Assembly: GCF_004010195.1 (NCBI RefSeq)
Contig: NC_057726.1
Location: 61,492,794 to 61,556,793 of the forward strand
Direction: 5' to 3'
Source of the DNA: Chiloscyllium plagiosum
Taxonomy: Eukaryota
DNA length: 64,000 bases
Shown: positions 7,481 through 47,699 of the stretch, piece after piece
Numbering within the stretch: the first letter of the stretch is position 1
Layout of the letters: every line of letters starts with the position of its first letter
Notes under the pieces: generated by a model
What the model was told of the DNA's origin: nothing
The model's input: only the letters and a program-made list of their open reading frames with translations
Databases searched by the model: none
Program-made: the position numbers and the translations under genes

Positions 7481-10262
7481 AAGTTAGAGGTTTATCAAAT
7501 CATAGGAGGAAATACTTAACTATGCCCCCTGTGATGGGGGAGTTCAAAACTAGAGGGCAGATTTTTAAACCTGAGAGAAGAATGGTTGATTTAAAAGGGG
7601 TCAGAAGTCAACTTTTTTTTTCAGGGTGCTTTTAACGTGCAATGAACTGCTGGAGGCAGTGGTGGATACAGGTACAGACAACATTTAAAAGCCAATTTAA
7701 CAGATGTAGAATAGGACCGGTTTGGAGGAATATGGGCTAAATGCAGACAAGTGGCACCTGCTTTAGTTTGGGAAATCTGATTGGCGAGAACAGGTTGGAC
7801 TGAAGAGTCTGTTTCCAAGCTGTTTGACTGACATTCCTGACAGACTTGGTTTGAGTTGCTTGTTGTGGGGTTCCTAGTTGCTAGCCTATTATTTTAGCTA
7901 CGTTTCTGATTAACCAAAAAAGGAGCTAGACTATATTAGCACCCAGGATGTTGATAGGCAATTCAGTGATGTAATGCCATTGAATACCACAGGGTAAGTT
8001 TTTAAAGTTTTTAGTATTGAGAAATTATTTGACTAGTATTACAGTCCAAATCTTGATGTGATCTGGCTCTTCTGTATGAGAATGAGGTATGTCAGTTGAA
8101 TCATTACACAATTTACAGCACAATTCACAATGAGCAGACATTCCCACGTCCTACTGTACAATGGCAAGGTCATTGAAGCAACTGCAGGTGATTATAGGGT
8201 AGTGTCCTAGGTACAGAGCTGGGGTTGGTGTGGCATAGTAGTAGTGTACCTACCTTTTTTGAGCCAGAAGACATTGGTTCAAGTCTCATCTACCTCAGAA
8301 GTATGAAATCACCTCTGTGAATAAATTTCTAAGAGTTCTTCAGAGAAGATATTTTCAGTTCTGACATAATTAACCTCCAATGACAAACCATCATCCTTTT
8401 GTGCTAAGAATGACTCCAACCATTGTAAAGTACCTTAGACCATTTTAATTTGGGCCAAGCCTGCAATTAAGTCTGAAGCCAAGTGGCTGTACCACACCCA
8501 AACTGAGCTCAGCAATAGACTATTGCTGATTGGTAATGCTTTTGAGCTGCTACTATCCCTTCTGATGGAAGTTGATAATAGGGTAATTGGATTTGTCCTT
8601 TTTTTTGTGAGATTAGGTCATACCTTGGCAATTTTACACATGGCACATCCAGTTTTGTAGGGGCACTACTAGGTCTGGGAAATGCTGGCTATCGCAGAAG
8701 CAGGTGTATTTTTTTTTACTGGGTCAACTGCACTAAACGGTCTACTGCAATTACTCAGCAAAATGCTTTGATTTATAAAGTTGGCTTGTGCTAGGAGATC
8801 TATGATGTGTAAAGACAAGTGACGAGTATGAAGGCCGTCATTAACGAACGTGCTTGGAGTTGGGGAGGTGAAAATGAACTTGTTTGAGCCAAGTGCTTTA
8901 TTTCAAACATAGTCCCTGAACACTCAGTGGTTATTGCTGGTCTCTGGCTGTTGAGTAGCCCAACATAATTTATTTTAACTTTTATATTCTTTGTTTGCAG
9001 TTTTCTCCTCTATCCACCCCCAAATGATCTGTTGAAGTCGTGGCAGCAAATAATTATCCGGTTATATGACTTAGCCATGGAACTTGTTTGCTTTTTCCTC
9101 TGTCCTATTTGAATTCCTAGAAGTCCCTTTTCATGTCAGTTGTACTAAGAATTTAACTGATTTTAACTATTCTTCACTGCAAAACATATTGGGCCTAGAC
9201 AATGTGCATGTTTGTGTGTGCGCGAGTGTGAGATGCAGCACTCCCTTATCATAGCCAGATCTCATATTGACCCTGTTAGACCTCTAGGTTTTGACCCGAA
9301 CTGAATTGTTTCTCTGGGAAAAGCAAAAAACAAGTTGCTACCTGTAGTCTCTAGTATACTTTACTTTAATGAGTTTTCCTCTACTGGGTCTCTGCATGTT
9401 GGGTTTGTGTGTCCTCCTGAAACATGACTATTTTAAAATAGGATCTGTTAATGAAGTTTGTGAGTGTTGCTGATGAAGGACACAATGCATCTTGTAAATC
9501 CAGTACTGTAAATTATTGCCGAACATTATTTTAAACATAACATTGGTCTTATTTAGTTCAATTGGTTGCCACTCTTTTGGATTTCAAGATTGCCTTAGAG
9601 CTATGAGATCTCAAGCCTTGCCTGGTACTTTATTGAAGTAATAGCTTGCAATAGTTCTTAAAGTCATCCAAATGTGTGCAATGTCAACCATGATCTGGAG
9701 CAAATTGTGAACGTTGTCTAGGGGAGAAGAAAACTTGCTGTACAAACTCTCCTTGATGTAGTAGAGTTGATATTGAACTGTAGTAGGCTCCTGATTGAGG
9801 TGGTGTAATGAGATCACACAATTAACAAGAGTAAGGAAAAAAAATCACCAGTATCAAATGGACATGTGAACAGATCTTTGACATTGTACCAGAGAGCTGT
9901 ATTTGAGAATGTACAATGTACAGATGTAAATAAAGGAGTGTTACCATACATAAGCATTTGAAGTTAATGAGCAAGCAGTTTCATCTGCAGATGTGCCAAT
10001 GTCCAGCCTGTGATCCTGCAATCCAGTATCTTTATCTGTAGGTAGCTGTACTGACTTTCAGCATATTCTGCCAGTTTACTGCCCCAATATTGAAAGTGAT
10101 ATTTAACTTTGCTGTCACTACTCAACATCCACATATAATGCTTGTGATGTTCCAGCCTGTTGTCTTTCCAGTAGCCGCAGTAAAGTGTGTGAGTGATGTT
10201 TTTTTAATGTATAATCAAATATCTGACACCTGTACCTTTCAAATAGCTCACATCTTCAGATT

Positions 10263-10415
10263 TTATTTGGGTTCTCTGCTTTTCTCTTTGTTTTCCACTT
10301 TTACTTCTGAGTATACTGTATGGTTGTTTTGCTGTTCAGGTTTTGGCGCTTTCTTAAAATTAGCAAGCTGTAATACTGCATAAGATACAATGTTATCTTC
10401 ATCTCTTTGTTCAGT
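10263..10415 (-). CDS. Receptor copy A, last coding exon: cytoplasmic tail with ITIM (VSYAVL) and ITSM (TVYSEV), ends TAA
   Basis: Acceptor tactttcacag, phase 0, 153 bp: TEQRDEDNIVSYAVLQLANFKKAPKPEQQNNHTVYSEVKVENKEKSREPK*. Homologous exon at 40353-40493. Confidence 0.88.
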   Translation of the reverse strand, partial: TEQRDEDNIVSYAVLQLANFKKAPKPEQQNNHTVYSEVKVENKEKSREPK

Positions 10416-11140
10416 CTGTGAAAGTAATATTTAAGATCACCTGTTAGTCCATTACCTCATTGCTTGAGGCAATTAAGATTAACAATACCTACCTTCCCCT
10501 ATACATGTACCTACACCATATGAACAGCAGCAGTTTCAAGGGCCATTGTGTATAGGGATTAAATGCTGGCCAGCCAGTGACACCCACATCCCATGAATAA
10601 TTTAAAAATATAGTCAAATTGAGGCAGAGGGCAAAATCAAGGGGGAGTCTCTTCCTCAGAGCGGTTAAGTTTGACCCCCTCCCATGATTCATCAGTGAAG
10701 GTCTGAAAGTTAATTTCATTAACATGCCCATCCAATTTCCTTCTGACATCACTAATCATCTCCGTTTCTTTGACATTGGTGCACATTAACTTATGGATGA
10801 TTATCAAAAGTTACAAAAACAAACACTGCATGCCTTTTAATCTCTTTCGCAAAACCTTACATAATAGTCGCTGTAGCATGTACTAGCGCGAATAGCTTTT
10901 TTTTTCCTTGTCTGGTTTAGCTAAACCTGTCTCAATCTTGGACACCTCTATTACATCACTAATTTCCTTTACGAAATGGAGAACTACTCTACTCTTCCAA
11001 CTTAGTCTCATAGATAAAATCTCCCATCCCGAGAACCATCTTAGTACATCTCCTCTGTACACTCTCAAGGACCCACACAGTCTTCCTCAAATGTGGCAAG
11101 GAAGCAGGTCCTGCCTTTATTACCTTTTCTCTAGCCCAAA

Positions 11141-11500
11141 CCCCTTCCCCCTATTAATTTCTCAACCCCCTTCCCCTCCCTAGACCTGATGAAGGGTCAT
11201 GCCCAAAACGTCGGTCCTCTTGCTCCTCCGGCGCTGTCTGACCTGCTGTGCTTTTTCCAGCGGCACACTTTATCGACTCTCAACCTCCGCAAGAAAGGCT
11301 TCAAATTCCATGCTGTATTCATTAATCTGACCCCTTCCCCCTATTAATTTCTCAACCCCCTTCCCCTCCCTAGACCTGATGAAGGGTCATGCCCAAAACG
11401 TCGGTCCTCTTGCTCCTCCGACGCTGTCTGACCTGCTGTGCTTTTTCCAGCGGCACACTTTATCGACTCTCAACCTCCATGCTGTATTCATTAATCTGAC
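11141..11500 (+). repeat. Tandem duplication (period 190 bp) of a PLE-derived short element end
   Basis: ccccttccccctattaatttctcaacccc...ttatcgactctcaacctcc begins at 11141 and again at 11331. The second copy lacks about 20 bp. Confidence 0.9.
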
Positions 11501-11931
11501 AGAAAGGCTAGCCAACTACTACCCCAATCAGAAATGTATGTTACACTAAATAAAAATTATCTTAACCTTATAAATGATATAGTATGCCAAAGCAAATCGT
11601 TTGTGTTTAATACTGTAAATTATTGGTTAGAGCTCAGTTGAATCGTGGTGCCATTCCATTTTGAAGGAGGATGTAACATCCGGGAAAGGATACAGAAGAG
11701 ATTTTCTGCAATGGTGTTGTGGGTGAGAGACTACCATTACGTTGGGGACTCCAGAATATGTGTGATTGATATCCTTGGGACAGAGAACGATAAGGGGCGA
11801 TCTAAGAGTCGCAAAAGGTACGGGAAGTCAGTGTAAAGAGTGAGGAATTGAGCTAGTCGGATAGATATTTTCAAAGGTCCTCACAGGGTATTTGAGTCCT
11901 ATGATTCTGTGACATTTAATTAGGTTGCACG

Positions 11932-12385
11932 ACTGCCTCACATCCTCAGGAGTTGTCTGTGTGGAGTTTGCACATTCTTGCTATGCCTGCGTGGGTTTCC
12001 TCCCACAATCTAAAGACGTGCGGGTTAGATGAATTGACCATGCTAAATTGCCGTAGTGTTCAGGGACGTGTAGGTTAGGTACATTAGTCAGGGGTAAATG
12101 ACGATGTGCAGGTTAAGCGAATTGGCCATGCTAACTTGCCCGTAGTATTCAAGGATGTGTAGGTTAGGTGCATTAGTCAGGGGTAAATGAAGATGTGCAG
12201 GTTAGGTGATTTGGCCATGCCAACGTGCCCGTAGTGCTCAGGGATATGTAGGTTAGGTAGATTAGTTAGGGGTAAATGTAGAGTTGGAGGGGAAATGGAT
12301 CTGGGTGGGTTACCCTTCGGAGGGTTTGTGTGGACTTGATGGGCCGAAGGGCCTGTTTCCACACTGTAGGGATTCTATGATTCTA
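11932..12385 (+). mobile_element. HE1-type SINE with an internally triplicated ~85-90 bp segment
   Basis: HE1 core and tail (ggccgaagggcctgtttccacactgtagggattctatga). The unit ccatgc...gtagtg..cagggat.tgtaggttaggt..attagt.aggggtaaatg occurs three times. Confidence 0.85.
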
Positions 12386-12448
12386 ATTAATGTTCCTAGA
12401 TGATTGGAGTCATTCTTAACCGCTCTTTTCGGAACATTGTCACCCTAC

Positions 12449-12483
12449 CTGCTTTTCATCTTGATTCACTTCCGCCGAAATGC
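12449..12483 (-). CDS. Receptor copy A, small cytoplasmic exon (G)ISAEVNQDEKQ
   Basis: Acceptor cttttctttcctttag, donor CAG/gtaggg, 35 bp, phase 1-0, joining the TM exon to the ITIM exon in frame. Same acceptor in the paralogue at 47076. Confidence 0.82.
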
Positions 12484-13053
12484 CTAAAGGAAAGAAAAGG
12501 AGCCCATCTTGAATAATTTATTGAGCGTACTCGCGAAACCGGCAACCTAGCATGGCCAAGAAGTCCAACTCACAAAATGCTGTGCATTACCTTCCTAAAA
12601 TCTGCAGTGACGCTATACACAACGGATCAGACTTTGTTTCTGTGGGATGGTGTCAAACAGGTGGTAAGTCCACAGTCCTTTTTGCATCGCAATGCTACTT
12701 TGGAAATAAAATCTGGACTGCTATTCAGGTTGTACCATTTCAAAATTAATATATTTCAAGGTCTGGACTATTATTTTAAGAACGAGATTTCGTGTAGAAA
12801 TCGACGAAACATTTTGAATGAGAAGGTGAAATCCTCTCATTTAAAACCGTATACTCGGTTTATATTGTCCAACTGTACTGCTGATCGTGTAGCGGGCTTG
12901 AGGTAGCAACTTCGTTATTTAAAATGCTCGTTATTCCTCTACAATTAATCACTGTTCATCTGCGCTTTGTCTTTTTATGACGCTAAAACAGTTAAAAAAA
13001 GACATTGGGTCTTAGAAACTGACAGTATTCGGAGAAATAATTAAGATTCTTAC

Positions 13054-13158
13054 CAGCTGATGCCTTTAACTTGAGTCTTGTCAAAACGAATATCAAAAGT
13101 AAAATTGCCAACACGCCGAATGTCCATCCAAACGCTAGAGAGTGATTGGCAACTTTAT
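13054..13158 (-). CDS. Receptor copy A, transmembrane exon (D)KVANHSLAFGWTFGVLAILLLIFVLTRLKLKASA
   Basis: Acceptor attctgcag, donor CTG/gtaaga, 105 bp, phase 1-1. About 20 hydrophobic residues followed by a basic stop-transfer RLKLK. Paralogous exon at 48856-48961. Confidence 0.9.
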
Positions 13159-13754
13159 CTGCAGAATCGATATTTGAATAAGAAACTGCAGAGCATAGCG
13201 AGATTTATATGCAGAGAATCGTGGATCAGACACAGAAGGGGGAGATGCAAAGGAGTATCCCAGGACGATCATGTCCAATAAATATTAGTAGGGACTGATC
13301 CCTTTTCTATAGGTAGTATGTCTTCAAGGATTACAACGTGTTTCAAATGACAAATCAGCTATAGGCCTGTAATGCAATTTATGGAGGGAACAATTCCAGA
13401 AAGGCACAAGAGACTTCTCTCTGTACTGTTTGTCAAAAGTAAAAGGTCTTACTTTTCCAACTTACCGTGCTTCCCTTGAGCGGCCTTCCACAGTGAATCT
13501 CGCATTTGTAAAACCCCGAAAGCATTGCAAAATGTCCCAGCGCTCTCCACGGCACGTTATTGAACACAACCCAGACAAAAAAAGTGATATGAGAACAGGT
13601 AGAGACAGATTTCGGGAGCGTGTGAAAGCAGAGAGAATCAGAGACGCGAAGGTCTTGGGGCGGGAAATCTGGAGTTCATTATGCGGAGATACCAGATTTT
13701 AAATGTGTAAACAGAGGATCCAAAAGTAACTGTCCTAGAACTGATTTTGTTTTA

Positions 13755-15250
13755 ACAAAACAAAGAACTGCGGGTGCTGGAAATCTGAAACAAAAACTGA
13801 AATTGCTGGCGAAATTCAGCAGGTCTGGCAGCTGGGAAGAAAGCAGAGTAACGTTTCCAGTCCAGTGGCTCTCCGTCAGAATTCTTATCAGTTACGAACA
13901 CGTGGCATTTATGCTGAAGTCGAAATTGGGGGAGGGGGTGATGAGTGGATACGTGGAGATAGAGCCCAGAGAGAGATATGAAAGAGGTAAGTCAACAGGT
14001 AGCTTATGGAGAACAGGCTAGAACAGAAGAAAAACTGAAAAATGATAAGACCAGGAAAGAATGAGTGAGCTGCGCTGAAAGCGATCCATGTAATGTGATA
14101 TTAAGCCCAAGAGTAGGTGAAAATGGGTGACTGTACTAAAAGCAATCCCCACCATAACGTACCATGGATACCTGCATAGGCTCCAGTTACGCCTCTGTGA
14201 GATACGTCGAACATTCCTTGTTCCAATCCTATTGCGATCGCCACCCACAACTCTTTCCTCAGTATATTGATGACATCATCAGTGCGGTTTCCCTTTCCCA
14301 TTCTGAACTGGAAACAATTATCAATTTCTGGGGATAGGTTGGCCGCTGGTATCCATCACACATCCATCAACTCCCACAGTTATCTTATCGCATACTCAAC
14401 TTCCTGACAGGACTCCATCCCGTTCTCCCAGATTCTCCATCTCCACTGTATTTGTTCTGATGGTGCGACCTTCGGCTGGGGTCTCAGAAATATCCACCTT
14501 TCTCCTCAAGGAGGATTCCCGCCACTGTAGTCGCCTTTAGCTGTGTTCAACCCATCTTTCGCACTTTGGCCCTCACACTTTCCCCTCCCTCGCACAGCAA
14601 TGACAAGGATTCCTGGGTGCTCACCTATCAGCCCACCAGCATTCACATCCAAAGGATCATTAGCCACCATTTCCACCACCTCCAGTAATGCCACCGTCAG
14701 GCATATGTTCCATCCCCTCCATTGTCAGCCTTCTGCCTGGACCATTGCCTCCAGGACACCCCGGTCCATTCCTTCCCATGCAATGGGAAAACATGTGACA
14801 CCTGCACCTTTGCTTCCTCCCTCCTCACTAATCAAAGCTCCAGAATCAAAACTTCCATGTTCTATGCATTCCATGATTCTAGGTGAAGCAGCAATTTATC
14901 TGCACTTCACTAACCACGGTCTATTGCATTCACTGCTAACAATGCAGTCTCTTCAACATTGGGGAAACAAAATGCAGACTGGGTGACCATCTTGCAGAAT
15001 ACCTACATTATGTCTGCAAACATGACCCAGAGTTGGCTGTCACTTCAAAACAGGCTTGCTGTAATGTTCTAGTGAGCCTCAGAACAAGCTTGAGGAACAA
15101 TATTTAGTTTTCTGCTTGTGGACCCTGCAGCCTTCAGAATTCAACATGGGGTTAAAGAACTTTATAGCCCTTTTCATCCTTTCATGTTTTTACCCACCCC
15201 ACACCCAGTCCTGTCATGACATGGGTTGCTTTCATTTGCATTTCGTATTA
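13755..15250 (+). mobile_element. Degenerate Penelope-like element (inverted left end, RT/GIY-YIG remnants)
   Basis: Similar to 22789-24275 and 50090-51905. Remnant ctattgcattcactgc...cattggggaaacaaaatgcagactgggtgacc reads as YCIxC...IGETKxRLGD. Confidence 0.65.
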
Positions 15251-15289
15251 TCTCCTGCTCTCAGCTTCCATTATCAATTAGTTAATCTT

Positions 15290-16740
15290 TATAGAGTCAA
15301 AGTGTCATACAGCACGGAAATAGATCCTTTAGTCCAACTCATACGTGCCGACCAGGGTTCCCAAACTAACTATTTACTTGTCTTTGGCCCATATCCCTCT
15401 AAACCTTTCCTATTCATTGACCTGTCCCAATGTCATTCAGATGTTGTAACTGGAGCTGCATCTATCACTTCCTCTGGCAGTTCATCTCACTTCAATCAGA
15501 TTCAGTGTGAAAATGTTGCACCTATTACCTTAAAATATGCCTTCTAGTTTTAAATTCTCCTACCTCAAGAAATCAAGCTTTGCTATTCATCTTATCTATG
15601 CCTGCCATGATTTTATAAACCTTTATAAGGTCACCCCTCAACCACATATGCTCCAGTGAAAAACGACCCAGCCTATCCAGCTTCTCCCTATAACTTAAAC
15701 CCTCCAGTCCAGGTAATATCCACATAAATCTTTTAAACATCATCTCCAATTTAATAGTATCATTTCAATAGCAGGGTGACCTGAACTGTGCACAGTACTC
15801 CAAAAGTGGCTTCACTAACTTCCTGTACAGCCACAACATGATGTCTCAACTCCTTCACCCAATTGTTTGATCAATGAAGACAACCGTGTCAAATACCGAC
15901 TTTACCATCCAGTACATGTCTGATGCAACTTTCCAAAAAATATATACCTTAACCCTTAGTTCTCTGTGTGACAACAATCCCAATGCCCCACCATTAACTG
16001 TATAAATCCTGCCCTTGTTCATCTTACCAAAACACAGCACTTCACATTGATCCAAATTAAACTCCACCTGCCACTCCTTGACCCACTGGTCCAATTGACC
16101 AAAATCCCTTTATAATCTTAGATAAAGTTTTTTCACTGTGCTATAGTAACAATTTTGGTGCCATTCGCAAACTTACCATACCTCCAGAATTCTCATCAAA
16201 ATCGTTCGTATAAATGACAAGCAACAGTGGGTCCAGCATCGGTTCCAATGGAACACCACTGGTTACAGACCTCCAGTCTGAAAACAACCCTCTAAACCCA
16301 CCATCTGTCTCCTACCATCTAGACAGTTTTCCATCCAATTGGCAAGCTATCCCTGATTCCCATGTGATCTAACTTGACTAACCAATCTTCCAGTCAGAAC
16401 CTTGTCAGAGGTTTTACTAAAGCCCATGTCGACAACATCTACCCTTCTGTCCTCCATCTATCTTCTTGGTCATGTCCTCAATCAACTCAATCACGTTTGT
16501 GAGATGCAAATTCCCACATACAAAGCCTGGTGACTATCCCTAAAGAGTCTTTGCCTTTCGAAATCCATGCAAATCCTGTCTATCACAACTGGCTCTAATA
16601 ACTTACAAGTAGAACATCGAACATTACAGCGCAGTGTCGCATTACCGACCTGTGAAACCAATCTGAAGCCCATCTAACCTACACTATTCCATTCTCGTCC
16701 GTATGTCAACCAATGACTATTTAAATGTCCTTATTGAACT
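15290..16740 (-). mobile_element. CR1-clade LINE, 3' ~1.4 kb, degenerate
   Basis: Minus-strand peptides WQVEFNLDQCEVLCFGK and RQRLFRDSHQ. CR1 tail repeat (tagagtca) at the left end. Confidence 0.85.
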
Positions 16741-17074
16741 CAATGGTCTACAATTCCCAGTCTTTTCATTTCAGCCTTCCTTAAGTAAAGGCTCAATAAT
16801 ATCTACCCAACAGTCCTCCGGCACCTCACCCGTGGTATTAGATGTTAGAAATATCTCTGCTACGGGCCTACAATTTTTTTCTCTAACGTTCCACAACGTC
16901 TTTTTAGGTGTAATTTCAGTTTTCTTCGACAAGAATTTGATAAAGAATGATCTTTTATCTTTCAAATCTCTTCATCTCGCCCTCTCTCGTTTGGACAGCT
17001 GTTCAGCTAGATGTCTACTCTCTAAACTCAAGTTTGAACACTTGCCTCAGAGCTGCAAATGTTTCCAGTCTTAC

Positions 17075-17368
17075 CTGGATTGACGGTGTAGTTGACACTG
17101 GCGGGTACAGGAAGGGAAACATGTGACACCAGACAAGTATAAACCACTCCGCTCCTGACGGGATGCGCTTCTTCCAAAGAGCTGGAAACCTCATAAAGTC
17201 CATCTGCTGTCGTCTTCACGGTTTGTATACTGGTCAGATTTTCGACACCATCTCTTCGCCAGGTGATACCGACAGACTCCGGGTAGCAGGCAGCGGTTTT
17301 ACACACGAGTTTCAAGGAATCGGCGGAAATCCCTTCAACTTGAATGAGCTTCAGTGGCAACGGCGACA
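17075..17368 (-). CDS. Receptor copy A, Ig C1-set domain exon
   Basis: Acceptor ttctcctttaag, donor CAG/gtaaga, 294 bp, phase 1-1. C1 motifs LVCKTAACYP..VGITW, DGLYEVSSSL and YTCLVSH (Y-x-C-x-V-x-H signature). Confidence 0.95.
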
Positions 17369-18892
17369 CTTAAAGGAGAAAATAAAAATTTAATGGAATA
17401 TCTCCTCATTTGACTACATCCGTGATGCTGTTACATACATAGCGTGACAATACTTATGCTCTTTATCGTTTAATTTTAAACATTGAAGTGTTCTATCCCC
17501 ACATCAAAATAGCAGGAATATGTGAAACGATAAGCAAAGAGTTTGAATCTCCCAGGACTGGTAACATGAAGGAAGACAGACACAATGTTCGGAAAGAGAT
17601 CCTGGAACGGGATTGGGGTTAGCAGCAGTCGGACCTCTGAGCAAATATTTCGAAGACAGTACACCTTAGTGTGCTGCTGAATCCTTTCTCCCCTTAGTGC
17701 AGTAGGGAAGGTTTGCGGTACTAAACATTTTGTCTCGCAAATTTCCTTAAAGCATATCCTGAGGAAGAGTCAAATCAAATTTCGAACGTTAACTCTATAT
17801 CTCTCCGCAAATGCTGCCACATCCATTGGGATTTTTTGTTGTGTTTTCCTCCTTTACACCTCACCCCTGCACCTTATAATTATTTTTTAGGTAGGGATAG
17901 CCATGACAGCCCCGGAGTCTCCTGCAGTGCACTCCAGATCCTTAGAAAACTTTGCTGACTTTGCTGACTGTTTTGGAAATTATCCTAAATTTGTATCCTC
18001 TGTTTGTTCATACCCATGGGAACAGCTTATCAGGTGTTTCCCGTCCTTAGCCTTGTTAATGACTGATCAGTGTGAAGTTCATAACATCCGCAAAGATGCA
18101 GAATCCAAGACGGAAAATTCTAATTCTGAACGCATGTCTTATATAATTCCAGAGTTTTTGTACTTCCCTACATTCATTGTGTCTGCTGATCTCTGTGTTC
18201 CCCTGCTTTTATCAGCGTTTTGTTTTGCCTTTAACAGACTGAATCAGTGTCCGCACAATCTCTAGGCGTCATATAACCTGAGATATGGGGCCTTGTTAAA
18301 TTTGCGTTGTTTGTGAGATTATTGAGGAACAATTTCGATGTTTTCTATACATGCATAATTTCCGAAATGTTGAAATACAAAATAATATAAATTTGCAAGT
18401 TTTATGGCCTGCACTAAGTACATAGCCAAGACTCAGAATTGTATTATTCTTTAACCCTGGATCTGCGTTAGTTAAGGGTGGCAAAAGATATGACCCAGGA
18501 GATGGTAGAATTGTTCCCATTGTCGCACATCAACATGGTTACTTTGGAGAGAAGGGACAAAGTTTTCTTAACTCATTAATTCATTCCAAACCAAAATTTA
18601 AACTTCTATTCTATGTCGGTATCTTCGTTTGAGAAGAATTATAAGCGGACAAAAATAACTGTTTGGAGATAAAACCCTTTCAAATATCAGGAGAGCAAGC
18701 GAGTGAAATTGGTCTTAGACTAAAGTACTCAAATAGCGAGAGTGAACCGATTGCTATTTAACACGAGTTCAATGACAAAGAAACACAAATCAATTTAAAA
18801 GCAATTCGAAGAATCTTCACTTAGCGGTCAAAAAAAATTGCACGTATCTAATAAAACTGAAAAGCAGCCTATCCCGGTACAAGGATCCTTAC

Positions 18893-19198
18893 CGTAAACA
18901 GTCAGCTGTGTGCCACCTCCATCGTCAATCCACCTTCGCCGGTGCTTTACCTCACAGAAATACACTCCGGCGTCAGCAAAACTGGCGTTTAGGATCTTAA
19001 AAGAACTTGTTCCCTTGTTTGTATTGATTCGCTTTCTGCTGTCTGGCTTCAGAAACGATTCCTCACCCCGTCTCCGCCAATAAACATCAGGAGTTTCTTC
19101 AAAGATAGGAAACATGCAGAACATGGAAACATTCCCACCTCTGGTGACGCTCAACAACTTCGGGAACTGTTTCACTTTTCTCAAAGTTACTTCAGCCG
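18893..19198 (-). CDS. Receptor copy A, Ig V-set (VJ-type) domain exon
   Basis: Acceptor tttcttttctgatag, donor ACG/gtaagg, 306 bp, phase 1-1. B-strand Cys (MFC), C-strand Trp (VYW), DAGVYFC and J-like GGGTQLTV all in one exon. Confidence 0.95.
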
Positions 19199-19936
19199 CT
19201 ATCAGAAAAGAAAGAGTCACGATAATATTTGCAAACGAACATACACCACACGAAGTAAGATTAGGCCTTTCAGCCTCTTAAACCTGCTCGGCTAGTCAAT
19301 AATTCTGTTCTGATTGCAGCTTCGACTCGACTCCGCTTTCCCGCGTATCCCTGAGAACCTTTCAACTCGTTGCTTGATGAGAATACGACAGACATAGGGA
19401 AAAAAGGACTTCGCGAATTAAAATGCAAGAACTGTTGAAAACTCTAGCAATCAAAGTGGAGTAGCACAGTGTTTAATTGTACAACGCAGAGCTATTGCAC
19501 CATCCTCTAAAAAGAATGCAAAAGATTTGGCGTAGGAGCATGTCGTAATGAAACGTACCTGTCCAAATTATGCCAAGGAGAGACATATACGGTACTATAA
19601 CTGTCACCAGCATATTTCAGATTTTTAAAAACGTCGTTGGCTTGTTGTTGTAGATGTGGATAGTGTACTGAATGGTTTGGTAGGAAAATTTTATCAAACC
19701 GATTACCATGATCTAAGATGTCACATGACAAGTGTTACGTCCTAGATGTCTAGGAACTGGGAGGTTCCCTGATCACTCCGGGTTGAGCAGATTCTATCTG
19801 ATGGCAAGGTCTTGCTGACACTACCAGCTTTTCAATAATTTATCAACAACAATGTTGGTGCCTTGGCTCAGTCTGAAAATAATGGTTCAGGTCGGAGGCA
19901 TGGCCATGTCTCCAGTATCTCACCTAAAGTATTCAC

Positions 19937-19991
19937 CTCCATGCAGGGCAGTGAGAGTGAGAAAATATTTAGCCTGGGCCTGCAAGTTCAT
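19937..19991 (-). CDS. Receptor copy A, leader exon MNLQAQAKYFLTLTALHG(A)
   Basis: Acceptor tttctgcttcag 6 nt before the ATG; donor GAG/gtgaat, phase 1, in frame with the V exon. Conserved in all three copies. Confidence 0.75.
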
Positions 19992-25435: not shown

Positions 25436-25729
25436 CTGGATTGACGGTGTAGTTGACACTGGCGGGTACAGGAAGGGAAACATGTGACACCAGACAGGTA
25501 TAAACCACTCCAGTCCTGACGGGATGCGCTTCTTCCAAAGAGCTGGAAACCTCATAAAGTCCATCTGCTGTCTTCTTCACGGTTTGTATACTGGTCAGAT
25601 TTTCGACACCATCTCTTCGCCAGGTGATACCGACAGGATCCGGGTAACAGGCAGCGGTTTTACACACGAGTTTCAAGGAATCGGCGGAAATCCCTTCAAC
25701 TTGAATGAGCTTCAGTGGCAACGGCGACA
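25436..25729 (-). CDS. Receptor copy B, Ig C1-set domain exon
   Basis: 294 bp, same splice sites as copy A, open frame, 4 aa differences from A. Confidence 0.9.
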
Positions 25730-26938
25730 CTTAAAGGAGAAAATAAAAATTTAATGGAATATCTCCTCATTTGACTACATCCGTGATGCTGTTACATTCA
25801 TAGCGTGACAATACTTATACTCATTATCGTTTAATTTTAAAATTGAAGTTTTCTATCCCCACAACAAAATAGCAGGAACATGCGAAACGATAAGCAAAGA
25901 GCTTGAATCTCCCAGGACTGGTAACACGAAGGAAGACAGACACAATGTTCGGAAAGAGATCCTGGAACGGGATTGGGTTTAGCAGCAGTCGGACCTCTGA
26001 GCAAATGTTTCGAAGACAGTATACCTCAGTGTGCTGCTGAATCCTTTCTCCCCTTAGCGCGGTAGGGAAGGTTTGCGGTACTGAACATTTTGTCTCGCAA
26101 ATTTCCCTAAAGCATATCCTGAAGAAGAGTCAAATCAAATTTCGAACGTTAACTCTATATCTCTCCGCAAATGCTGCCACATCCATTGGGATTTTTGTTG
26201 TTGACTTCCTCCTTTACACCTCACCCCTGCACCTTATCATTATTTTTTAGGTAGGGATAGCCATGACTGCCCCGGAGTCTCCTGCAGTGCATTCCAGATC
26301 CTTAGAAAACTTTGCTGAAAGACTTTGCTGACTGTTTTGGAAATTATCTTAAATTTGTATCCTCTGTTTGTTCTCCACCCATGGGAACAGCTTATCAGGT
26401 TTATACCGTCCTTAGCCTTGTTAATTACTGATCAGTGTGAAGTTCATAACATCCGCAAAGATGCAGAATCCAAGACGGAAAATTCCATTTCTGAGCGCAC
26501 GTCTTACAAAATTCCAGAGTTTTTGTACTTCCCTACATGACCCAGGAGATGTTAGAATTGTTCCCATTGTCGCACATCAACATGGTTACTTTGGAGAGAA
26601 GGGACAAATGCCTACTTAACTCATTGATTCATTCCAAACCAAAATTTAAACTTCTATTCTATGTCGTTATCTTCGTTTGTGAAGAATTATAAGTGAACAA
26701 AAATAACTGTTTGGAGATAAAACCCTTTCAAATATCAGGAGAGAAAACGAGTTAAATTGATCTTAAACTAAAGTACTCAAATAGCGAGAGTGAACCGGTT
26801 GCTGTTTAACACGAACTCAATGACAAAGAAACACAACTCAATTTAAAAGCAATTCGAAGAATCTTCACTTAGCGATAAAAAAATTGCACGTGTCTAATAA
26901 AACTGAAAAGCAGCCTATCCCGGTACAAGGATCCTTAC

Positions 26939-27244
26939 CGTAAACAGTCAGCTGTGTGCCACCTCCATCGTCAATCCACCTTCGCCGGTGCTTTACCTCA
27001 CAGAAATACACTCCGGCGTCAGCAAAACTGGCGTTTAGGATCTTAAAAGAACTTGTTCCCTTGATTGTATTGATTCGCTTTCTGCTGTCTGGCTCCAGAA
27101 ACGATTCCTCACCCCGTCTCCGCCAATAAACATCAGGAGTTTCTTCAAAGATAGGAAACATGCAGAACATGGAAACATTCCCACCTCTGGTGACGCTCAA
27201 CAACTTCGGGAACTGTTTCACTTTTCTCAAAGTTACTTCAGCCG
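26939..27244 (-). CDS. Receptor copy B, Ig VJ-type domain exon
   Basis: 306 bp, splice sites intact. 2 nt differences from copy A, both non-synonymous (K>E, N>I). Confidence 0.9.
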
Positions 27245-27960
27245 CTATCAGAAAAGAAAGAGTCACGATAATATTTGCAAACGAACATACACCACACGAA
27301 GTAAGATTAGGCCTTTCAGCCTCTTAAACCTGCTCGGCTAGTCAATAATTCTGTTCTGACTGCAGCTTCGACTCCGCTTTCCCGCGTATCCCTGAGAACC
27401 TTTCAACTCGTTGCTTGATGAGAATACGACAGACATAGGGAAAAAAGGACTTCGCGAATTAAAATGCAAGAACTGTTGAAAACTCTAGCAAAGTGGAGCA
27501 GCACAGTGTTTAATTGTACAACGCAGAGCTATTGCACCATCCTCTAAAAAGAATGCAAAAGATTTGGCGTAGGAGCATGTCGTAATGAAACGTACCTGTC
27601 CAAATTATGCCAAGGAGAGTCATATACGGTACTATAACTGTCACCAACATATTTTAGATTTTTAAAAACGTCGTTGGTTTGTTGTTGTAGATGTGGATAG
27701 TGTACTGAATGGTTTGGTAGGAAAATTATATCAAACCGATTACCATGATCTAAGATGTCACATGACAAGTGTTGCGTCCCAGATGTCTAGGAACTGGGAG
27801 GTTCCCTGATCACTACAGGTTGAGCAGATTCTATCTAATGGCAAAGTCTTGCTGACACTACCAGCTTTTCCATAATTTATCAACAACAATGTTCGTACCT
27901 TGGCTCAGTCTGAAAATAATTGTTCAGGTCGGAGGCATGGCCATGTCTCCAGTATCTCAC

Positions 27961-28015
27961 CTCCATGCAGGGCAGTGAGAGTGAGAAAATATTTAGCCTG
28001 GGCCTGAAAGTCCAT
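27961..28015 (-). CDS. Receptor copy B, leader exon MDFQAQAKYFLTLTALHG(A)
   Basis: 55 coding bp, donor GAG/gtgaga, phase 1. Homologous to 19937-19991. Confidence 0.75.
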
Positions 28016-39165: not shown

Positions 39166-40352
39166 TTAGTGTACATGCACATGTTACTTAAATAGTATTA
39201 AAATGTATTTTGTGAAATTTATAGTTACAACGGAAAAAAATGCAATTTGATCTGGACTTGAGCTATTGAGATTCATGGTCCTGAAAGGTAATAAACCACA
39301 AGCATTTTTATTTTATTGTGCCTACTATCTGTGTCCAACATCCTTCTCTTGATAATTACTGAGCGCAATGGGGTATATGAGTTGAGATCCCTCTTAAAAG
39401 AAATGTGAGAATTAAATGCTTTGCATTAGTCATTGGGTATGGACATCACTGGCTAAGTTTGTATTTATTATCCATCCCAAATCACCCTTGCAGATTGTGG
39501 TTAGCTGACTTTTGATTGCTTCAGTCCTTTGTGTGTAAGTACTCCCATACTATTGTTCAGAAGACATTCAAGGATGTTAATTCAGGAAGAAATGAGGGAA
39601 CAATGAGGATGTAATGCAGGCTGGTGTGCGGTTTGGAGAGGAGCTTGCAGGTCGTCCAGCATCTGCTGCTCTTGTCCTTCCAGATGGTCAAGGTCATGGG
39701 ATTAAAAGTTGTTGTTGGAGATGTCTTGGAGAGTTGCTATAGTGCAACTTGCAGATAGTACACATTGTTGTCCCTGTACATCAAATGTGGAGGAATTGAA
39801 TATAGAAAGTGTTGGATTGGATGCCTTTTACATAGGCTGCTTCACCTTGGATGGTGTTGAGCGTCTTGGCTGATAGATATGCACTCATGCAGGCAAATGG
39901 AGACTATTTCATGATGCTCCTGACTTATGCCTTCTCGATGATGAAAAGGCATTCACATGTCATGAAGCAAATTACTTGCTGCATAAATCTTTGCCTTCCA
40001 ATTGTTCTTGCAATGCCAGTATTTATTTAGAGTGCTGATAAATGTTTTATAATGAGATTCATTTCAGTCATGTAAGAGCAGAGGCACCAATCTCGAATAA
40101 GCATACAAAGAATCTTACACAGTAAACTGGAGAGTTGTATTAGAGAACTTATGTACAGATATATCATTAAACAATGAAGGTGAAAATTACCATTTCACCC
40201 TCCCTTCTTACCATGCACGAGTAATGTTACATATCATTTCAATAGTTAGCCACAATAAATGAAACAGTGATAGATATCAATTGTATGGTATATGACTGGA
40301 TATCCTCGGCTTCCATCCATAAACAATTCACTACTTCTGTTTTTCTAGATTC

Positions 40353-40493
40353 TCAGCTTCTTTTGTTCGTTGCCAGCTTTATATCTGCATATACTGTGCA
40401 TTTGTCCAGAGATATAGGTGGTGATTTGTGTTTTGGAATTAGCAAGCTTCAAGTGGCATACGCCAAATTGTCATCTCGGCTTCCTTGTTTAGT
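40353..40493 (-). pseudogene. Receptor copy C, last exon: ITIM interrupted by TGA (LAYAT*), downstream ITSM TVYADI untranslated
   Basis: Acceptor tactttcacag identical to copy A. Reads TKQGSRDDNLAYAT*SLLIPKHKSPPISLDKCTVYADIKLATNKRS*, with TGA at 40449-40451. Same Tyr-Tyr spacing (23 codons) as copy A. Confidence 0.82.
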
Positions 40494-41869
40494 CTGTGAA
40501 AGTAATGTTTGATATCAATTGTTAGTGCATTGTCACTCACTACTTAAGATTATCATGGTTGAAAATAAAGGCTGTTAGCAAATTTCCTTTCAATTCCTAA
40601 TTTGCCTCATGACCTCTATCATGCAGAAGGACAAGAGAAAAAGATGCCTTGGGATGTCACTATCTCCATACTGACTTGGAATTATACCACTGCCCCTTCA
40701 CAGTCGCTGGTCAAAGTAATCAAACCTTTTCCTAACAGTATTATAGGTGTGTCAACACCACATGGAGTGCAAAGGTTCCAGACGACAACCAACTGTTATC
40801 TTCTCAAGATCAATTAGATGGGCAAGAAGTGTTGGTCTAGTCAGTGCTCCCCACATGTCATGAATGAATATGAACTTGAGTTAGAGCAATGTCGAGTCAC
40901 TAAAAACAGCATATGGCCTATCAAGTCTAAAGTCTTTTTGAGAGGTAAGTCAGTCATTCTACTCCTTTATTTGATGACTGTAGCCCTTCCCTGTAGCCCC
41001 TTTCATCAAGTGCTCATCCAATTCCCTTTTGAAACAATTGATGGTCTCTGCTTCCACCACCCTAATGGGCTATATGTTCCTGGCCAATATCACACAAGTT
41101 TCCTTGGATTTCCTCTGCATGTATTTACCAAAATCTCAAATGTATTTTCCCAAGATTTTGTGCTGTCAATTAGTGGGACAGGTTTTTCCTTGTCACCCTT
41201 ATCTAAAGCTACTATAATCTTGAACACCTCTATGATGTCATACCCTCAATCTCCTTTTATCAAGGCCAATAATCTCATCTTTTCCAAGCTGATCATGCAT
41301 CTACTATTTCTGATCTCGAATACTTACGTGGTGTATCCCATGTACACCCCCGGAGGACCTACGTTTCCTCAACTGTGATGACAAGAAGTTCATTCAGTAT
41401 TCTGCTCATTCAGAGTGCCCCTGCTCATTCATAGTATTTATTGATTTCTTTAAAAGTAGCCACTGATTGGTGGACTATAAACTACTTCTATTTGGAAATT
41501 CTTTTCCTTGCTTTTTCTCACCTCCACCCACAGATGTTTTGCCATATTTATTTTCTGAACAAAGGTGATTTCTCATGACTGTACTGCTCATACATTTATT
41601 AACAGAGCCATGTCCTTTGTTTTGATGCTGTCCTTATGTAAGGTCACACACTTTTAATATATATTATCCAGTTTTGGTTATCTTGCAAACACATCTCTAC
41701 AATGTTATCATATCGTAGCTGTTTTTCTGTAATCATGTGATCAATTCATCAAGCCTGTTACAAATTCTTGGTTTGAGACGAAAAAAACATGCAGATTCTG
41801 GAATCCAAGGTAGACAGTCAGGAGGCTGGAAGAGCACAGCAGGCCAGGCAGCCATCAGGAGGTGGAGGA

Positions 41870-44080: not shown

Positions 44081-45234
44081 GAAGTCGACATTTCAAATGT
44101 AACCTGAAGAACGTTTACATCCGAAACGTCGACTCCTCCACCTCCTGATGCTGCCTGGTGTCAGTTACGAATTCTGTCTACTTCAGCAGAACAGGCCTTA
44201 GTCTGACCTTTTGCATCATCTTTTGACAAGACATGTTGACTTGTGCTAATCATACTACACATTTCTAACTGCATTTTTTATACTCTTTTAATAATATGTT
44301 GCAGAAGTTTGTGAAGGAATAATAACAGGTGAACGGCCCTGCAGTTCCCTGTTTTCCCTTGCTTTTTCCTTGAAAGTGAAGTTATATTTTCCAACTCTCA
44401 ATCTGATGTGAATACTTTTGGAAATAAGGAATTTTGTTTGACCATTGTTCACATAGATATCTTCATTTCCTGTGAAAATGTCTGTTGTCTGTGTATGGGT
44501 GCAAATATTTACTTTGGCATCTCTTTTTTTGTATACTTAATAATGGTCTTACAATCAAATTTTATATTTTTAGCTAGTTTGCTTTCCCCCCCCATTTTAT
44601 CAATTTTTTGATGCATTCTAATATCAGATTTAATTTCTTGAGTGAGTCATGGATGATTTTTGGCTGAGTTTTTATTATTTAACTAACTGAATTTTGCTCT
44701 GCATCTTGAATTGTGTCTTTAAATCCTTCCCACTGTGCATTTAAGTATCAGCATAACAAAGTTATATAATCAACCTATTTTCACTGCATTTTGATATAAT
44801 TGATATTGCTTAAGTTTATGATTGAAGTTCATGATTGGAACTTTGGCAAACCTTACTAATTAATAAAACATTATAATTATAATTAATAATAATTATGATA
44901 GCTAGATAGAATAGTTATCTATGATAACTTCATTCAGAGGCAGCTGTAAAATGCATTGCTGCATGAAGTGATCACAAAAAACTCTGCAAATTTCTCTTCC
45001 AGATTGTCCTTTAAAAAATGTAATTGACACTCCCGATGTGAAGGGTAAATTCACCCAGGACAAATACATTTCCTTTGTGTCAAGCTGCAAAGGTTTAGTT
45101 CAATGTTTGGTCCACAATATACTTTCTGTCATGTGTTCTAAAAACTGCTCCTGCTATCATTTTCTGACTCCCGATATTTCCATTTACCACGGAGTGTGAT
45201 TCTGTTTTGTGATTTTCTTTCCAATGTTGCTGCA

Positions 45235-45470
45235 ACAGGTTCGATTCCAGCCTTGGGTGACTGTCTGTGCGGAGTTTGCACATTCTCCCCATGTCTGCGT
45301 GGGCTTCCTCTGGGCGATCTGGTTTCCTTCCACAGTCCAAAGATGTGCGGGTCAGGTGGATTGGCCATTCTAAATTGCCCATAATATTAGGAGAATTAGT
45401 CAGAGAGAAATGGGTCTGGGTGGGTTACTCTTCGGAGGGTTGGTGTGGACTGGTTGGGCCGAATCGGGAA
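45235..45470 (+). mobile_element. HE1-type SINE
   Basis: ggttcgattccagccttgggtgactgtctgtgcggagtttgcacattctccccatgtctgcgtggg (B-box-like start plus HE1 core). Confidence 0.85.
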
Positions 45471-47031: not shown

Positions 47032-47075
47032 CAGCTGTTGAGTTTCATCCACTTCCACAGAATGTTTCCTAACAC
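47032..47075 (-). pseudogene. Receptor copy C, small cytoplasmic exon (G)VRKHSVEVDETQQL, downstream of the premature stop
   Basis: Acceptor cttttctttcctttag as in copy A, donor CTG/gtaagg, 44 bp, phase 1-0. Confidence 0.78.
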
Positions 47076-47149
47076 CTAAAGGAAAGAAAAGAAATCTATA
47101 CTGAATGTAAAATATAATAACACAATTATAGCAATGAATAAATGAATAT

Positions 47150-47640: not shown

Positions 47641-47699
47641 ATACTGTATGCTTGTGGTAATAATGTATTGAGTGCACAATCAGCAATAGTGATCTGCAT

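What the first reader, a model, noticed from the sequence alone, without database searches (positions are those of the whole stretch)
10263..19991. Intact non-rearranging VJ-C1 antigen-receptor-like gene with an inhibitory ITIM+ITSM tail
Seen: six minus-strand exons (55+306+294+105+35+153 = 948 nt) with canonical GT-AG sites and matching phases splice into a 315-aa type I membrane protein. The V exon carries its own J-like G strand (DDGGGTQLTV) with no intervening RSS, and is followed by a true C1-set domain. Four of the six exons are missing from the ORF track. Established: C1 domains are largely confined to Ig/TCR/MHC/B2M, tapasin, SIRP and some B7 members; germline VJ domains occur in NKp30, the CD28 family, CD8, SIRP and NITR; a VJ-C1 gene is the architecture proposed for the pre-RAG ancestor of antigen receptors. 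Inference: this is a one-VJ, one-C1 inhibitory receptor family in a cartilaginous fish that I cannot assign to a named gene.
Basis: partly seen in the sequence, partly recalled or inferred. Interest (0 to 1): 0.92.

Follow-up and report, generated by a model that had tools for sequence, protein, structure and literature searches.

The report
Shark SIRP-like inhibitory V-C1 receptor gene
This is an apparently intact shark gene for a cell-surface receptor with one antibody-like variable domain, one constant domain and an inhibitory tail. It belongs to a large family found only in sharks, rays and chimaeras, which databases label SIRP-alpha-like and which no paper found here describes.

Summary
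The gene is real at the sequence level. All have AG/GT sites and matching phases. A family-typical leader of the same length and phase lies at 19613-19559.

It can be assigned. It belongs to a multigene family seen here only in cartilaginous fishes. RefSeq names members inconsistently, most often 'tyrosine-protein phosphatase non-receptor type substrate 1-like' (SIRP-alpha-like). The window holds three tandem V+C1 copies, and only this one keeps an intact TM and tail. Earlier first-reader notes of this scan report similar genes elsewhere in this genome.

- **V domain:** scores best against antigen-receptor V domains.
- **C1 domain:** typical C1-set.
- **Tail:** matches SIRP-alpha's SHP-2-binding two-tyrosine segment by eye.

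Most likely function is an inhibitory, SHP-1/2-recruiting member of a paired-receptor family. No RNA evidence could be obtained.

Non-rearranging VJ-C1 genes (UrIg, UrIg2, SIRP-alpha) are already published, so this is a new variant of a known kind. Interest is moderate.

The parts
19559..19613 (-). Leader exon (family type): ATG at 19613, 55 nt, ends in phase 1, donor G|GTACGT. Best-supported exon 1.
   Evidence: tblastn of the N-terminus of homologue P0154 hits here in all 3 copies. Sequence read. Matches the family leader pattern in alignment A1. ORF, ATG and donor kept in copies B and C. Mean KD 1.94.
19937..19991 (-). Doubtful as leader; possibly an alternative or untranslated 5' exon.
   Evidence: Coordinates and donor. 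Unlike any family N-terminus. Mean KD 0.26. Its 3' 34 nt plus donor are invariant in A, B and C, and copy C has a 21-nt in-frame deletion.
18893..19198 (-). V exon with the last leader residues and a germline-joined J-like G strand (GGGTQLTV). 306 nt, phase 1 to 1.
   Evidence: Splice sites. Pfam V-set E 9.5e-11. 66.7% identity over 102 aa to Heterodontus P0154. No RSS-like motif.
17075..17368 (-). C1-set domain exon, 294 nt, phase 1 to 1. Contains the YTCLVSH hallmark.
   Evidence: Splice sites. Pfam C1-set E 8.2e-9. All 60 PDB rows shown are C1-domain proteins: Ig constant regions, MHC I/II, TAPBPR, NCR3LG1 and UrIg2. 63-67% identity to Heterodontus members.
13054..13158 (-). Stalk + transmembrane + stop-transfer exon (uncharged TM, then RLKLK). 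105 nt, phase 1 to 1.
   Evidence: Splice sites. 72% identity over 29 aa to P0154. Best 10-aa KD window 3.72. Covered without change in the exon by a DNA contig of run X1.
12449..12483 (-). 35-nt cytoplasmic mini-exon, phase 1 to 0.
   Evidence: Best acceptor among 6 open 35-nt candidates. Aligns to the segment just after the TM in P0154, P0162 and P0164, while the other 5 candidates align elsewhere with lower scores. 7 of 11 residues match P0154. This is the weakest exon.
10263..10415 (-). Tail exon: ITIM VSYAVL (10388-10371), ITSM TVYSEV (10319-10302), tyrosines 23 residues apart, stop TAA 10265-10263.
   Evidence: 50-51% identity to the last exon of P0154, P0195 and P0196. No other tail-like exon lies between 10416 and 13053.
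9629..10267 (-). Possible 3' UTR. Candidate poly(A) signals: AATAAA overlapping the stop (10267-10262), ATTAAA (10208-10203), AATAAA (9634-9629).
   Evidence: Read. Not tested: no RNA reads lay here.

Best explanation
Gene A (19613-10263, minus strand) is an apparently intact six-exon gene. It encodes a type I membrane protein: split leader, one germline-joined VJ-type V domain, one C1-set domain, an uncharged TM, and a short tail with one ITIM and one ITSM 23 residues apart.

It is the inhibitory member of a local three-copy cluster. It belongs to a large multigene family of V-C1 receptors found only in cartilaginous fishes, which resembles the SIRPs.

Proposed mechanism (inferred, not shown): the V domain binds a ligand. 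Src-family kinases then phosphorylate the two tail tyrosines. The doubly phosphorylated segment engages the tandem SH2 domains of SHP-1/SHP-2 and damps activation, as in SIRP-alpha. Family members with charged TMs and short tails would be the activating partners.

Shown: the exons, domain types, family membership and motif conservation. Inferred: expression, phosphatase recruitment, the ligand and the cell type.
For: - Canonical splice sites and matching phases for all exons.
- Pfam V-set and C1-set above their cut-offs.
- Homologues of the same architecture: 31 of 31 hits and 46 of 46 hits are from cartilaginous fishes.
- Of 30 cluster representatives looked up, 24 are from cartilaginous fishes, 3 are unnamed ENA/Logan fragments, and 3 are unrelated multi-Ig proteins of turtles and a mussel.
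- One RefSeq isoform, P0161 (Heterodontus, 324 aa), has exactly this layout: TM, short segment, single tail module.
- C1-exon tree of 41 rows: copies A, B and C form one clade (SH-aLRT 99) inside an 18-row elasmobranch subfamily (99). That subfamily holds both long-tailed and charged-TM short-tailed members.
- Of 49 family proteins with tails of 40 aa or more, 42 carry an ITIM-like motif. Of 31 short-tailed ones, 11 have an R...[DE]H transmembrane segment. The TM finder was crude, and isoforms and fragments were included.
- V exon identity between A and C is 97.7%, against 82-84% in the 300-nt flanks.
- Similarity to SIRP, full family profile: SIRP-alpha 2wng scores E 1.6e-26 with V-C1 aligned to d1-d2, and SIRP-gamma scores 5.8e-24.
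- Similarity to SIRP, ESM Atlas: SIRP clusters score 0.95-0.96 with 197-200 shared features.
- Similarity to SIRP, tail: 13 of 29 positions, with one 1-residue gap, match the SIRP-alpha SHP2-binding peptide printed in PMC5589908. Tyr-Tyr spacing is 23 here and 24 there. The alignment was made by eye.
Against: - No RNA support. The only RNA runs of the species were single-cell libraries, read at 2-6%, and they hit only a repeat. A low-depth run of uncertain kind gave one contig in the putative 3' UTR.
- Exon 1 is ambiguous.
- The 35-nt exon rests on splice-site quality and an 11-residue similarity.
- Only one tail module is present, where many homologues have two.
- SIRP-alpha d1 is not among the 60 best PDB matches of the V profile. 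Those that span the whole V domain are V-NAR, TCR-alpha, CD79b and nanobodies.
- No SIRP of a bony vertebrate came up in the word-index searches. That index is insensitive, so this says little.
- The tail comparison is unscored.
Confidence: 0.72

Rival explanations
1. The family is the true cartilaginous-fish counterpart (co-orthologue) of the SIRP genes of bony vertebrates. It either lost one C1 domain or keeps the ancestral single-C1 form. The finding would then simply be 'shark SIRP'.
For: - RefSeq automatic names.
- The family profile scores SIRP-alpha at E 1.6e-26 over V-C1.
- Atlas feature similarity to SIRP clusters.
- The tail module resembles SIRP-alpha's ITYADL...NNHTEYASI segment.
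- A paired inhibitory/activating layout, as in SIRP-alpha/beta (PMC12975943 passages).
- Some members have two C1 domains, for example P0131.
Against: - One C1 domain, not two.
- The V profile prefers antigen-receptor V domains over SIRP d1.
- In one search an Ig light-chain-containing chain and UrIg2 score higher than SIRP-alpha.
- The automatic names are inconsistent: also NCR3LG1-like, tapasin-related-like, Ig lambda-like and TCR beta-like.
- No synteny or phylogeny with bony-vertebrate SIRPs could be run.
Confidence: 0.4
2. It is an independent relic of the pre-RAG antigen-receptor lineage, kin of UrIg/UrIg2. It acquired an ITIM tail by exon shuffling or convergence and is not specifically related to SIRPs.
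For: - Single-exon VJ with split leader, as described for UrIg2 (PMC12227049, section 7).
- UrIg2 is the top PDB row for the C1 exon and second for the family profile.
- The V profile is closest to V-NAR and TCR V.
Against: - The UrIg2 E-values are sums over three C domains. The best single domain gives only 20.7 bits against the C1 exon, no better than IgA or IgY constant domains.
- UrIg has three C1 domains and is secreted. UrIg2 has nine C domains.
- The tail similarity to SIRP-alpha argues for shared descent of at least that exon.
Confidence: 0.2
3. The copy is not expressed or is a young pseudogene. The open frames only reflect recent duplication.
For: - No RNA reads on any exon.
- Neighbouring copy C has a frameshifted TM-like exon and a tail pseudo-exon with stops.
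- Copy B has no visible TM or tail.
Against: - All six exons are open, with intact splice sites.
- The exons are far better conserved than the flanks.
- The TM and tail are 50-72% identical to homologues in species from other orders.
- The RNA sampling was no real test.
Confidence: 0.1
4. It is a B7/NCR3LG1-type ligand (V + C1-like domain) rather than a receptor.
For: - Several homologues are auto-named NCR3LG1-like.
- NCR3LG1 appears among the C1 matches at E about 7e-8.
- Pfam C2-set_3 (butyrophilin Ig-C) at E 1.2e-6.
Against: - The V domain has a J-type G strand and matches antigen-receptor V domains. The only B7-type V hit is PD-L1 at E 1e-3.
- C1-set outscores C2-set_3.
- The conserved ITIM/ITSM modules and charged-TM partners are features of a paired receptor.
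Confidence: 0.05

Closest known systems
SIRP-alpha / SIRP family (SHPS-1, PTPNS1)
   Same: - N-terminal V-set domain with a J-like strand, followed by C1-set domain(s), a single TM and ITIM-bearing tail (PMC2785349 and PMC12975943 passages).
- A two-tyrosine segment with nearly the same spacing and shared KK and NNHT.Y residues (by eye).
- Inhibitory and charged-TM activating relatives exist.
- The family profile hits SIRP-alpha at E 1.6e-26.
   Different: - One C1 domain instead of two.
- One tail module here instead of two.
- The V domain scores better with V-NAR, TCR and CD79b than with SIRP d1.
- Activating-type relatives carry R...D/E-H in the TM rather than the single basic residue described for SIRP-beta.
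- Orthology and CD47 binding were not tested.
UrIg and UrIg2 (non-rearranging shark VJ-C1 genes)
   Same: - Elasmobranch, single-exon VJ, split leader, C1-type constant domains, no RSS (PMC12227049 sections 4 and 7).
- UrIg2 is among the best PDB matches.
   Different: - UrIg has three C1 domains, is secreted and is made in the liver. UrIg2 has nine C domains.
- Neither is described with an ITIM tail: 'ITIM', 'ITSM', 'SIRP' and 'inhibitory' occur 0 times in that paper.
- Per-domain similarity to UrIg2 is no higher than to Ig constant domains.
PD-1 / CD28-family and Siglec-type ITIM+ITSM receptors
   Same: An ITIM followed by an ITSM in a short tail.
   Different: - Those ectodomains have no C1-set domain (recalled knowledge).
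- The residues between and around the tyrosines match SIRP-alpha instead.
PRARP genes (Fu et al. 2019) and teleost NITRs
   Same: Non-rearranging IgSF receptors with VJ-type domains that have been proposed as antigen-receptor relics. PRARP was seen only as a mention and a reference entry in PMC10751288. Their details are recalled, not read.
   Different: Could not be compared.

Membership tests
Cartilaginous-fish V-C1 'SIRP-alpha-like' multigene family (RefSeq automatic models) | Leader, VJ-type V, C1, TM and tail in separate exons, with high sequence identity to members | tested here: met
   Against Heterodontus P0154 or P0162: V 66.7% over 102 aa, C1 63-67%, TM 72% over 29 aa, tail 50% over 48 aa. 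The window copies fall inside an 18-row elasmobranch clade with SH-aLRT 99.
Cartilaginous-fish V-C1 'SIRP-alpha-like' multigene family (RefSeq automatic models) | Family leader pattern and the V-C1 linker (VPPTPL in the consensus) | tested here: met
   The leader at 19613-19559 matches the pattern. The linker here is VSPLPL.
Cartilaginous-fish V-C1 'SIRP-alpha-like' multigene family (RefSeq automatic models) | Tail module LTYAxLxL ... xxYAxV | tested here: met
   VSYAVLQL ... TVYSEV. 42 of 49 long-tailed family proteins carry an ITIM-like motif.
SIRP family | N-terminal V-set domain followed by C1-set domains | tested here: met
   Pfam V-set and C1-set. SIRP-alpha d1-d2 aligns along V-C1 of the family profile.
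SIRP family | [quoted passage not shown] | tested here: not met
   Only one C1 exon lies between V and TM. No further Ig-like open frame was found in the 3.9-kb intron.
SIRP family | ITIM tail that recruits SHP-1/SHP-2 | tested here: inconclusive
   The motifs and spacing resemble the SIRP-alpha SHP2-binding peptide, with 13 of 29 positions matching by eye. Binding cannot be tested with these tools.
SIRP family | Orthology: phylogeny with bony-vertebrate SIRPs and conserved synteny; CD47 binding | not tested
UrIg / UrIg2 | VJ exon with split leader and no RSS | tested here: met
   Feature as described in PMC12227049, section 7.
UrIg / UrIg2 | Three or more C1-type domains; specific sequence kinship | tested here: not met
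   A single C1 domain. The best single UrIg2 domain scores 20.7 bits against the C1 exon, similar to Ig constant domains.
Rearranging Ig/TCR genes | V and J segments separated and flanked by RSS | tested here: not met
   The G strand is contiguous within the V exon. There are 0 heptamer-like and 0 nonamer-like motifs in the 3 V exons and their flanks.

The most novel reading that the evidence does not exclude
This family is the cartilaginous-fish branch of the SIRP lineage and keeps the ancestral two-domain VJ-C1 form. Its V domain is still closer to antigen-receptor V domains than mammalian SIRP d1 is. It would then be a living, signalling-competent bridge between SIRPs and the VJ-C1 gene that the RAG transposon invaded. 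It would also show that ITIM/SHP-coupled paired receptors of this design predate the split of cartilaginous and bony vertebrates.
Probability: 0.2. Interest if true: 0.8.

Novelty: new variant of a known kind. Interest (0 to 1): 0.5.

Why it matters
V-C1 receptors outside Ig/TCR/MHC are rare, and they are used to reason about how antigen receptors began. Hatherley et al. noted that no SIRP was known outside animals with adaptive immunity (PMC2785349).

A large, paired, SIRP-like V-C1 family in the earliest-branching living jawed vertebrates has three uses:
- It dates this receptor design to the base of the gnathostomes.
- It offers an outgroup for SIRP evolution.
- It gives concrete genes whose V and C1 domains can be placed against UrIg, UrIg2, Ig and TCR.

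For genome annotation, it shows that the automatic names of these genes are unreliable. RefSeq variously calls them SIRP-alpha-like, NCR3LG1-like, tapasin-related-like, Ig lambda-like and TCR beta-like.

Tried and rejected
**RNA evidence.** The look-up of sequencing runs listed no RNA holder. Read laying on 9300-15299 gave only repeat-derived reads in single-cell run X5, and none in X6. Run X7, of uncertain kind, gave one 284-nt contig at 9656-9940. This is no test of expression.

**Tail search.** The tail exon against PDB sequences gave 0 matches at E up to 10. A tail-only word-index search with P0096 residues 258-368 gave 5 hits among 32 candidates, all from cartilaginous fishes. It therefore said nothing about SIRPs of other vertebrates.

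**Extra exons.**
- No extra cytoplasmic exon turned up between 10416 and 13053.
- No activating-type TM exon turned up anywhere in the window for copies B or C.

**Assignments rejected.**
- UrIg/UrIg2 membership was rejected on domain number and per-domain scores.
- A B7-type ligand was rejected on the V-domain matches.
- A PD-1-type reading of the tail was rejected in favour of a SIRP-alpha-type reading.

**Literature.**
- Searches returned search listings only. Their titles and abstract openings showed no paper describing a SIRP-like or ITIM-bearing V-C1 family of cartilaginous fishes.
- Subscription journals and supplements are not covered. Supplements of PMC12227049 and PMC10751288 might list such genes.
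- Fu et al. 2019 (PRARP) and Flajnik et al. 2023 (UrIg) are not held.

**What I saw of each paper.**
- PMC12227049: outline, sections 4 and 7, and a term count.
- PMC2785349, PMC10751288, PMC12975943, PMC5413580 and PMC5589908: passages only.

**Spliced model.** It was handled exon by exon. Database homologues stood in for the full-length protein.

Full report
**What is there**

Reading the junctions base by base gives five exons:
- V exon 19198-18893: 306 nt, AG before, GTAAGG after.
- C1 exon 17368-17075: 294 nt, AG / GTAAGA.
- Stalk/TM exon 13158-13054: 105 nt, AG / GTAAGA.
- A 35-nt exon, discussed below.
- Tail exon 10415-10263: 153 nt, AG before, TAA stop.

Six open 35-nt AG..GT candidates exist in the right phase. 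Only 12483-12449 has a strong acceptor (94% pyrimidines, CAG|GTAGGG). Its peptide is the only one that aligns just behind the TM of homologues P0154, P0162 and P0164. It matches 7 of 11 residues of P0154.

By arithmetic the phases run 1,1,1,1,0 and the coding length is 948 nt. None of the three N runs of the window lies in the gene. The exons were searched one at a time, and natural full-length homologues from the databases stood in for the whole protein.

**The leader needs correcting**

It resembles no homologue's N-terminus.

The N-terminus of the Heterodontus homologue P0154 instead matches 19613-19563 in this copy, and the equivalent place in the other two copies. The sequence there is an ATG with A at -3, then 18 codons plus one base, then G|GTACGT. 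That is again 55 nt ending in phase 1. The peptide MLVTVIVPYMSLLGIIWT fits the family leader pattern and has a mean KD of 1.94. ATG, frame and donor are kept in copies B and C. This gives the short-intron 'split leader' typical of antigen-receptor-type genes.

Its last 34 nt and its donor are identical in all three copies. Copy C has an in-frame 21-nt deletion there. One Scyliorhinus homologue also has two RefSeq isoforms with different first exons.

**Domain identities**

Pfam results:
- V exon: V-set at E 9.5e-11 (42.3 bits, cut-off 26).
- C1 exon: C1-set at E 8.2e-9 (36.1 bits, cut-off 21), ahead of the butyrophilin-type C2-set_3 (28.9 bits).
- TM and tail exons: no family.

Against PDB sequences, the 60 best rows for the C1 exon are Ig constant regions, MHC class I and II, TAPBPR, NCR3LG1 and UrIg2. 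UrIg2 heads the list only because three domains add up. Its best single domain scores 20.7 bits.

The V exon carries the G strand GGGTQLTV in the same exon. No RSS-like heptamer or nonamer occurs in or beside any of the three V exons. A V-only profile (alignment A5, 11 rows) scores best, among matches that cover the whole domain, with these:
- shark V-NAR, 50.7 bits;
- TCR-alpha V domains;
- CD79b;
- nanobodies.

Multi-Ig adhesion proteins rank higher only by summed partial matches. SIRP-alpha d1 is not among the 60 rows shown.

**The gene is one of three tandem copies**

tblastn of the exon peptides against the window gives these hits:

| Exon | Copy A | Copy B | Copy C |
|---|---|---|---|
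| V | 19196-18894 | 27242-26940 | 56403-56101 |
| V identity to A | 100% | 98% | 96% |
| C1 | 17366-17076 | 25727-25437 | 53371-53084 |
| C1 identity to A | 100% | 96% | 95% |

The TM exon has only one significant hit, copy A itself. The tail exon has its own hit plus a weak one at 40493-40344.

- Copy C has a TM-like exon at about 48835-48995 with a 1-nt insertion. It also has a tail-like exon with in-frame stops.
- Downstream of its C1 exon, copy B matches copy C until an N run.
- The V exons of A and C are 97.7% identical, while the 300-nt flanks are 82-84% identical. The exons are therefore under selection or are being homogenised.

**It can be assigned to a family**

A word-index-free HMMER search with the V exon found 494 proteins at E up to 1e-3. 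Giant multi-Ig proteins top the list by summed scores. Below them come single-match proteins of 130-500 aa with 36-67% identity.

The 30 that I fetched mostly share one layout: leader, VJ-type V, a VPPTPL-type linker, C1, TM, and a tail with repeated LTYAxLxL ... xVYAx modules.

Names and sources:
- 24 of the 30 cluster representatives looked up are RefSeq or UniProt proteins of sharks, rays and the elephant shark.
- 3 are unnamed ENA or Logan fragments.
- 3 are unrelated multi-Ig proteins of turtles and a mussel.

A search with Heterodontus P0154 gave 31 of 31 hits from cartilaginous fishes. A search with a 26-sequence alignment gave 46 of 46.

The automatic names disagree. Most are 'tyrosine-protein phosphatase non-receptor type substrate 1-like' (SIRP-alpha). 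Others are SIRP beta-1-like, NCR3LG1-like, tapasin-related-like, Ig lambda-1-like, TCR beta-like, CD276 homolog or uncharacterised.

In the species with several listed members (Heterodontus, Scyliorhinus, Heptranchias, both Mobula species, Callorhinchus, Mustelus), nearly all of them sit on one large contig. One Mobula birostris model sits on a small unplaced contig.

In a C1-exon tree of 41 rows, A, B and C form one clade (SH-aLRT 99). That clade lies inside an 18-row elasmobranch subfamily (99) that contains both long-tailed members and short-tailed members with an R...D/E-H transmembrane segment. The RefSeq isoform P0161 has the same single-module tail layout as this gene.

First-reader notes of this scan report similar genes 41 kb, 0.7 Mb and 7.5-8.7 Mb away, and on other pieces of this genome. 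I did not check those.

**Relation to known families**

The full family profile against PDB sequences scores as follows:

| PDB chain | E-value | Note |
|---|---|---|
| Ig light-chain-containing chain | 1.6e-34 | |
| UrIg2 | 2.6e-32 | four domains |
| SIRP-alpha 2wng | 1.6e-26 | V-C1 aligned to d1-d2 |
| SIRP-gamma | 5.8e-24 | |

The ESM Atlas places SIRP-alpha-like clusters among the nearest named clusters, at 0.95-0.96 with 197-200 shared features. This is a lead only.

The tail is the most telling part. PMC5589908 prints the SIRP-alpha peptide used as a bisphosphoryl SHP2-binding motif. PMC5413580 calls its ITYADL an ITIM and its TEYASI an ITSM. Aligned by eye to the tail exon with one 1-residue gap, 13 of 29 positions agree. 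The shared positions include both tyrosines, YA.L.L, KK, AP and NNHT. The tyrosines are 23 residues apart here and 24 in SIRP-alpha. I did not type that peptide into a tool, so the match has no score.

The published non-rearranging shark genes differ:
- UrIg has three C1 domains and is secreted.
- UrIg2 has nine C domains (PMC12227049, sections 4 and 7).
- That paper does not mention ITIM, ITSM, SIRP or inhibitory signalling.

The idea that a V-C1 receptor is close to the antigen-receptor precursor is in print for SIRP-alpha (PMC2785349 passages).

**Mechanism**

Most likely this is an inhibitory receptor. After ligand binding by the V domain, the two tail tyrosines are phosphorylated and bind the tandem SH2 domains of SHP-1/SHP-2, as described for SIRP-alpha (PMC12975943 passages). 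The charged-TM, short-tailed relatives in other species would signal through an ITAM adaptor. All of this is inference from motifs and homology.

**What could not be done**

- Expression is untested.
There is therefore no model, no fold search and no synteny.
- No bony-vertebrate SIRP, PRARP or NITR sequence was available for trees.
- The literature searches turned up no description of this family. Subscription journals and supplements were out of reach.

**Verdict**

- The gene is real and apparently intact. Its leader needs correcting.
- It is a member of a SIRP-like V-C1 paired-receptor family, seen here only in cartilaginous fishes, that databases hold only as automatic models.
- It is a new variant of a known kind and of moderate interest.

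Noticed in passing
window 25437-28015 (copy B) and 40335-57161 (copy C): Two further tandem V+C1 copies, 95-98% identical to copy A in the exons. Copy C has a TM-like exon with a 1-nt insertion (about 48835-48995) and a tail-like exon with in-frame stops (40511-40335). Copy B runs into an N gap with no TM or tail seen. No activating-type TM exon was found in the window.
   Followed up: partly
window 18593-19498 vs 55800-56705: The V exons of A and C are 97.7% identical, but the 300-nt flanks are only 82-84% identical. This fits gene conversion or strong purifying selection on the exon. In the V exon, A vs B shows 0 synonymous and 2 non-synonymous changes; A vs C shows 3 and 4.
   Followed up: partly
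window 10390: DNA run X1 reads G where the window has A. On the coding strand this turns the Ile two residues before the ITIM into Thr. The ITIM core is unchanged.
   Followed up: no
window 11900-12400: A very high-copy short repeat, with depth up to about 1.4 million in DNA run X1. It is also the only part hit by single-cell RNA reads. It ends about 60 nt before the 35-nt exon.
   Followed up: no
window 11150-11520: Two direct copies of a unit of about 190 nt in intron 5. The same open frames are repeated at 11189-11347 and 11379-11549.
   Followed up: no
window 15576-16673: Reverse-transcriptase-like open frames (LINE-type fragment) on the minus strand inside the C1-TM intron.
   Followed up: no
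family proteins P0016, P0165, P0166, P0089, P0102, P0068, P0204 (other species): Short-tailed family members share a TM with an Arg near the outer face and Asp/Glu-His near the inner face. This is an unusual charged-TM signature for putative activating partners.
   Followed up: partly
P0011, P0061 (turtles): Among the V-exon hits are turtle proteins made of 4-6 tandem VJ-type domains, each ending in a GxGTxVTI strand. They are auto-named NCAM2-like, titin-like or pIgR-like.
   Followed up: no
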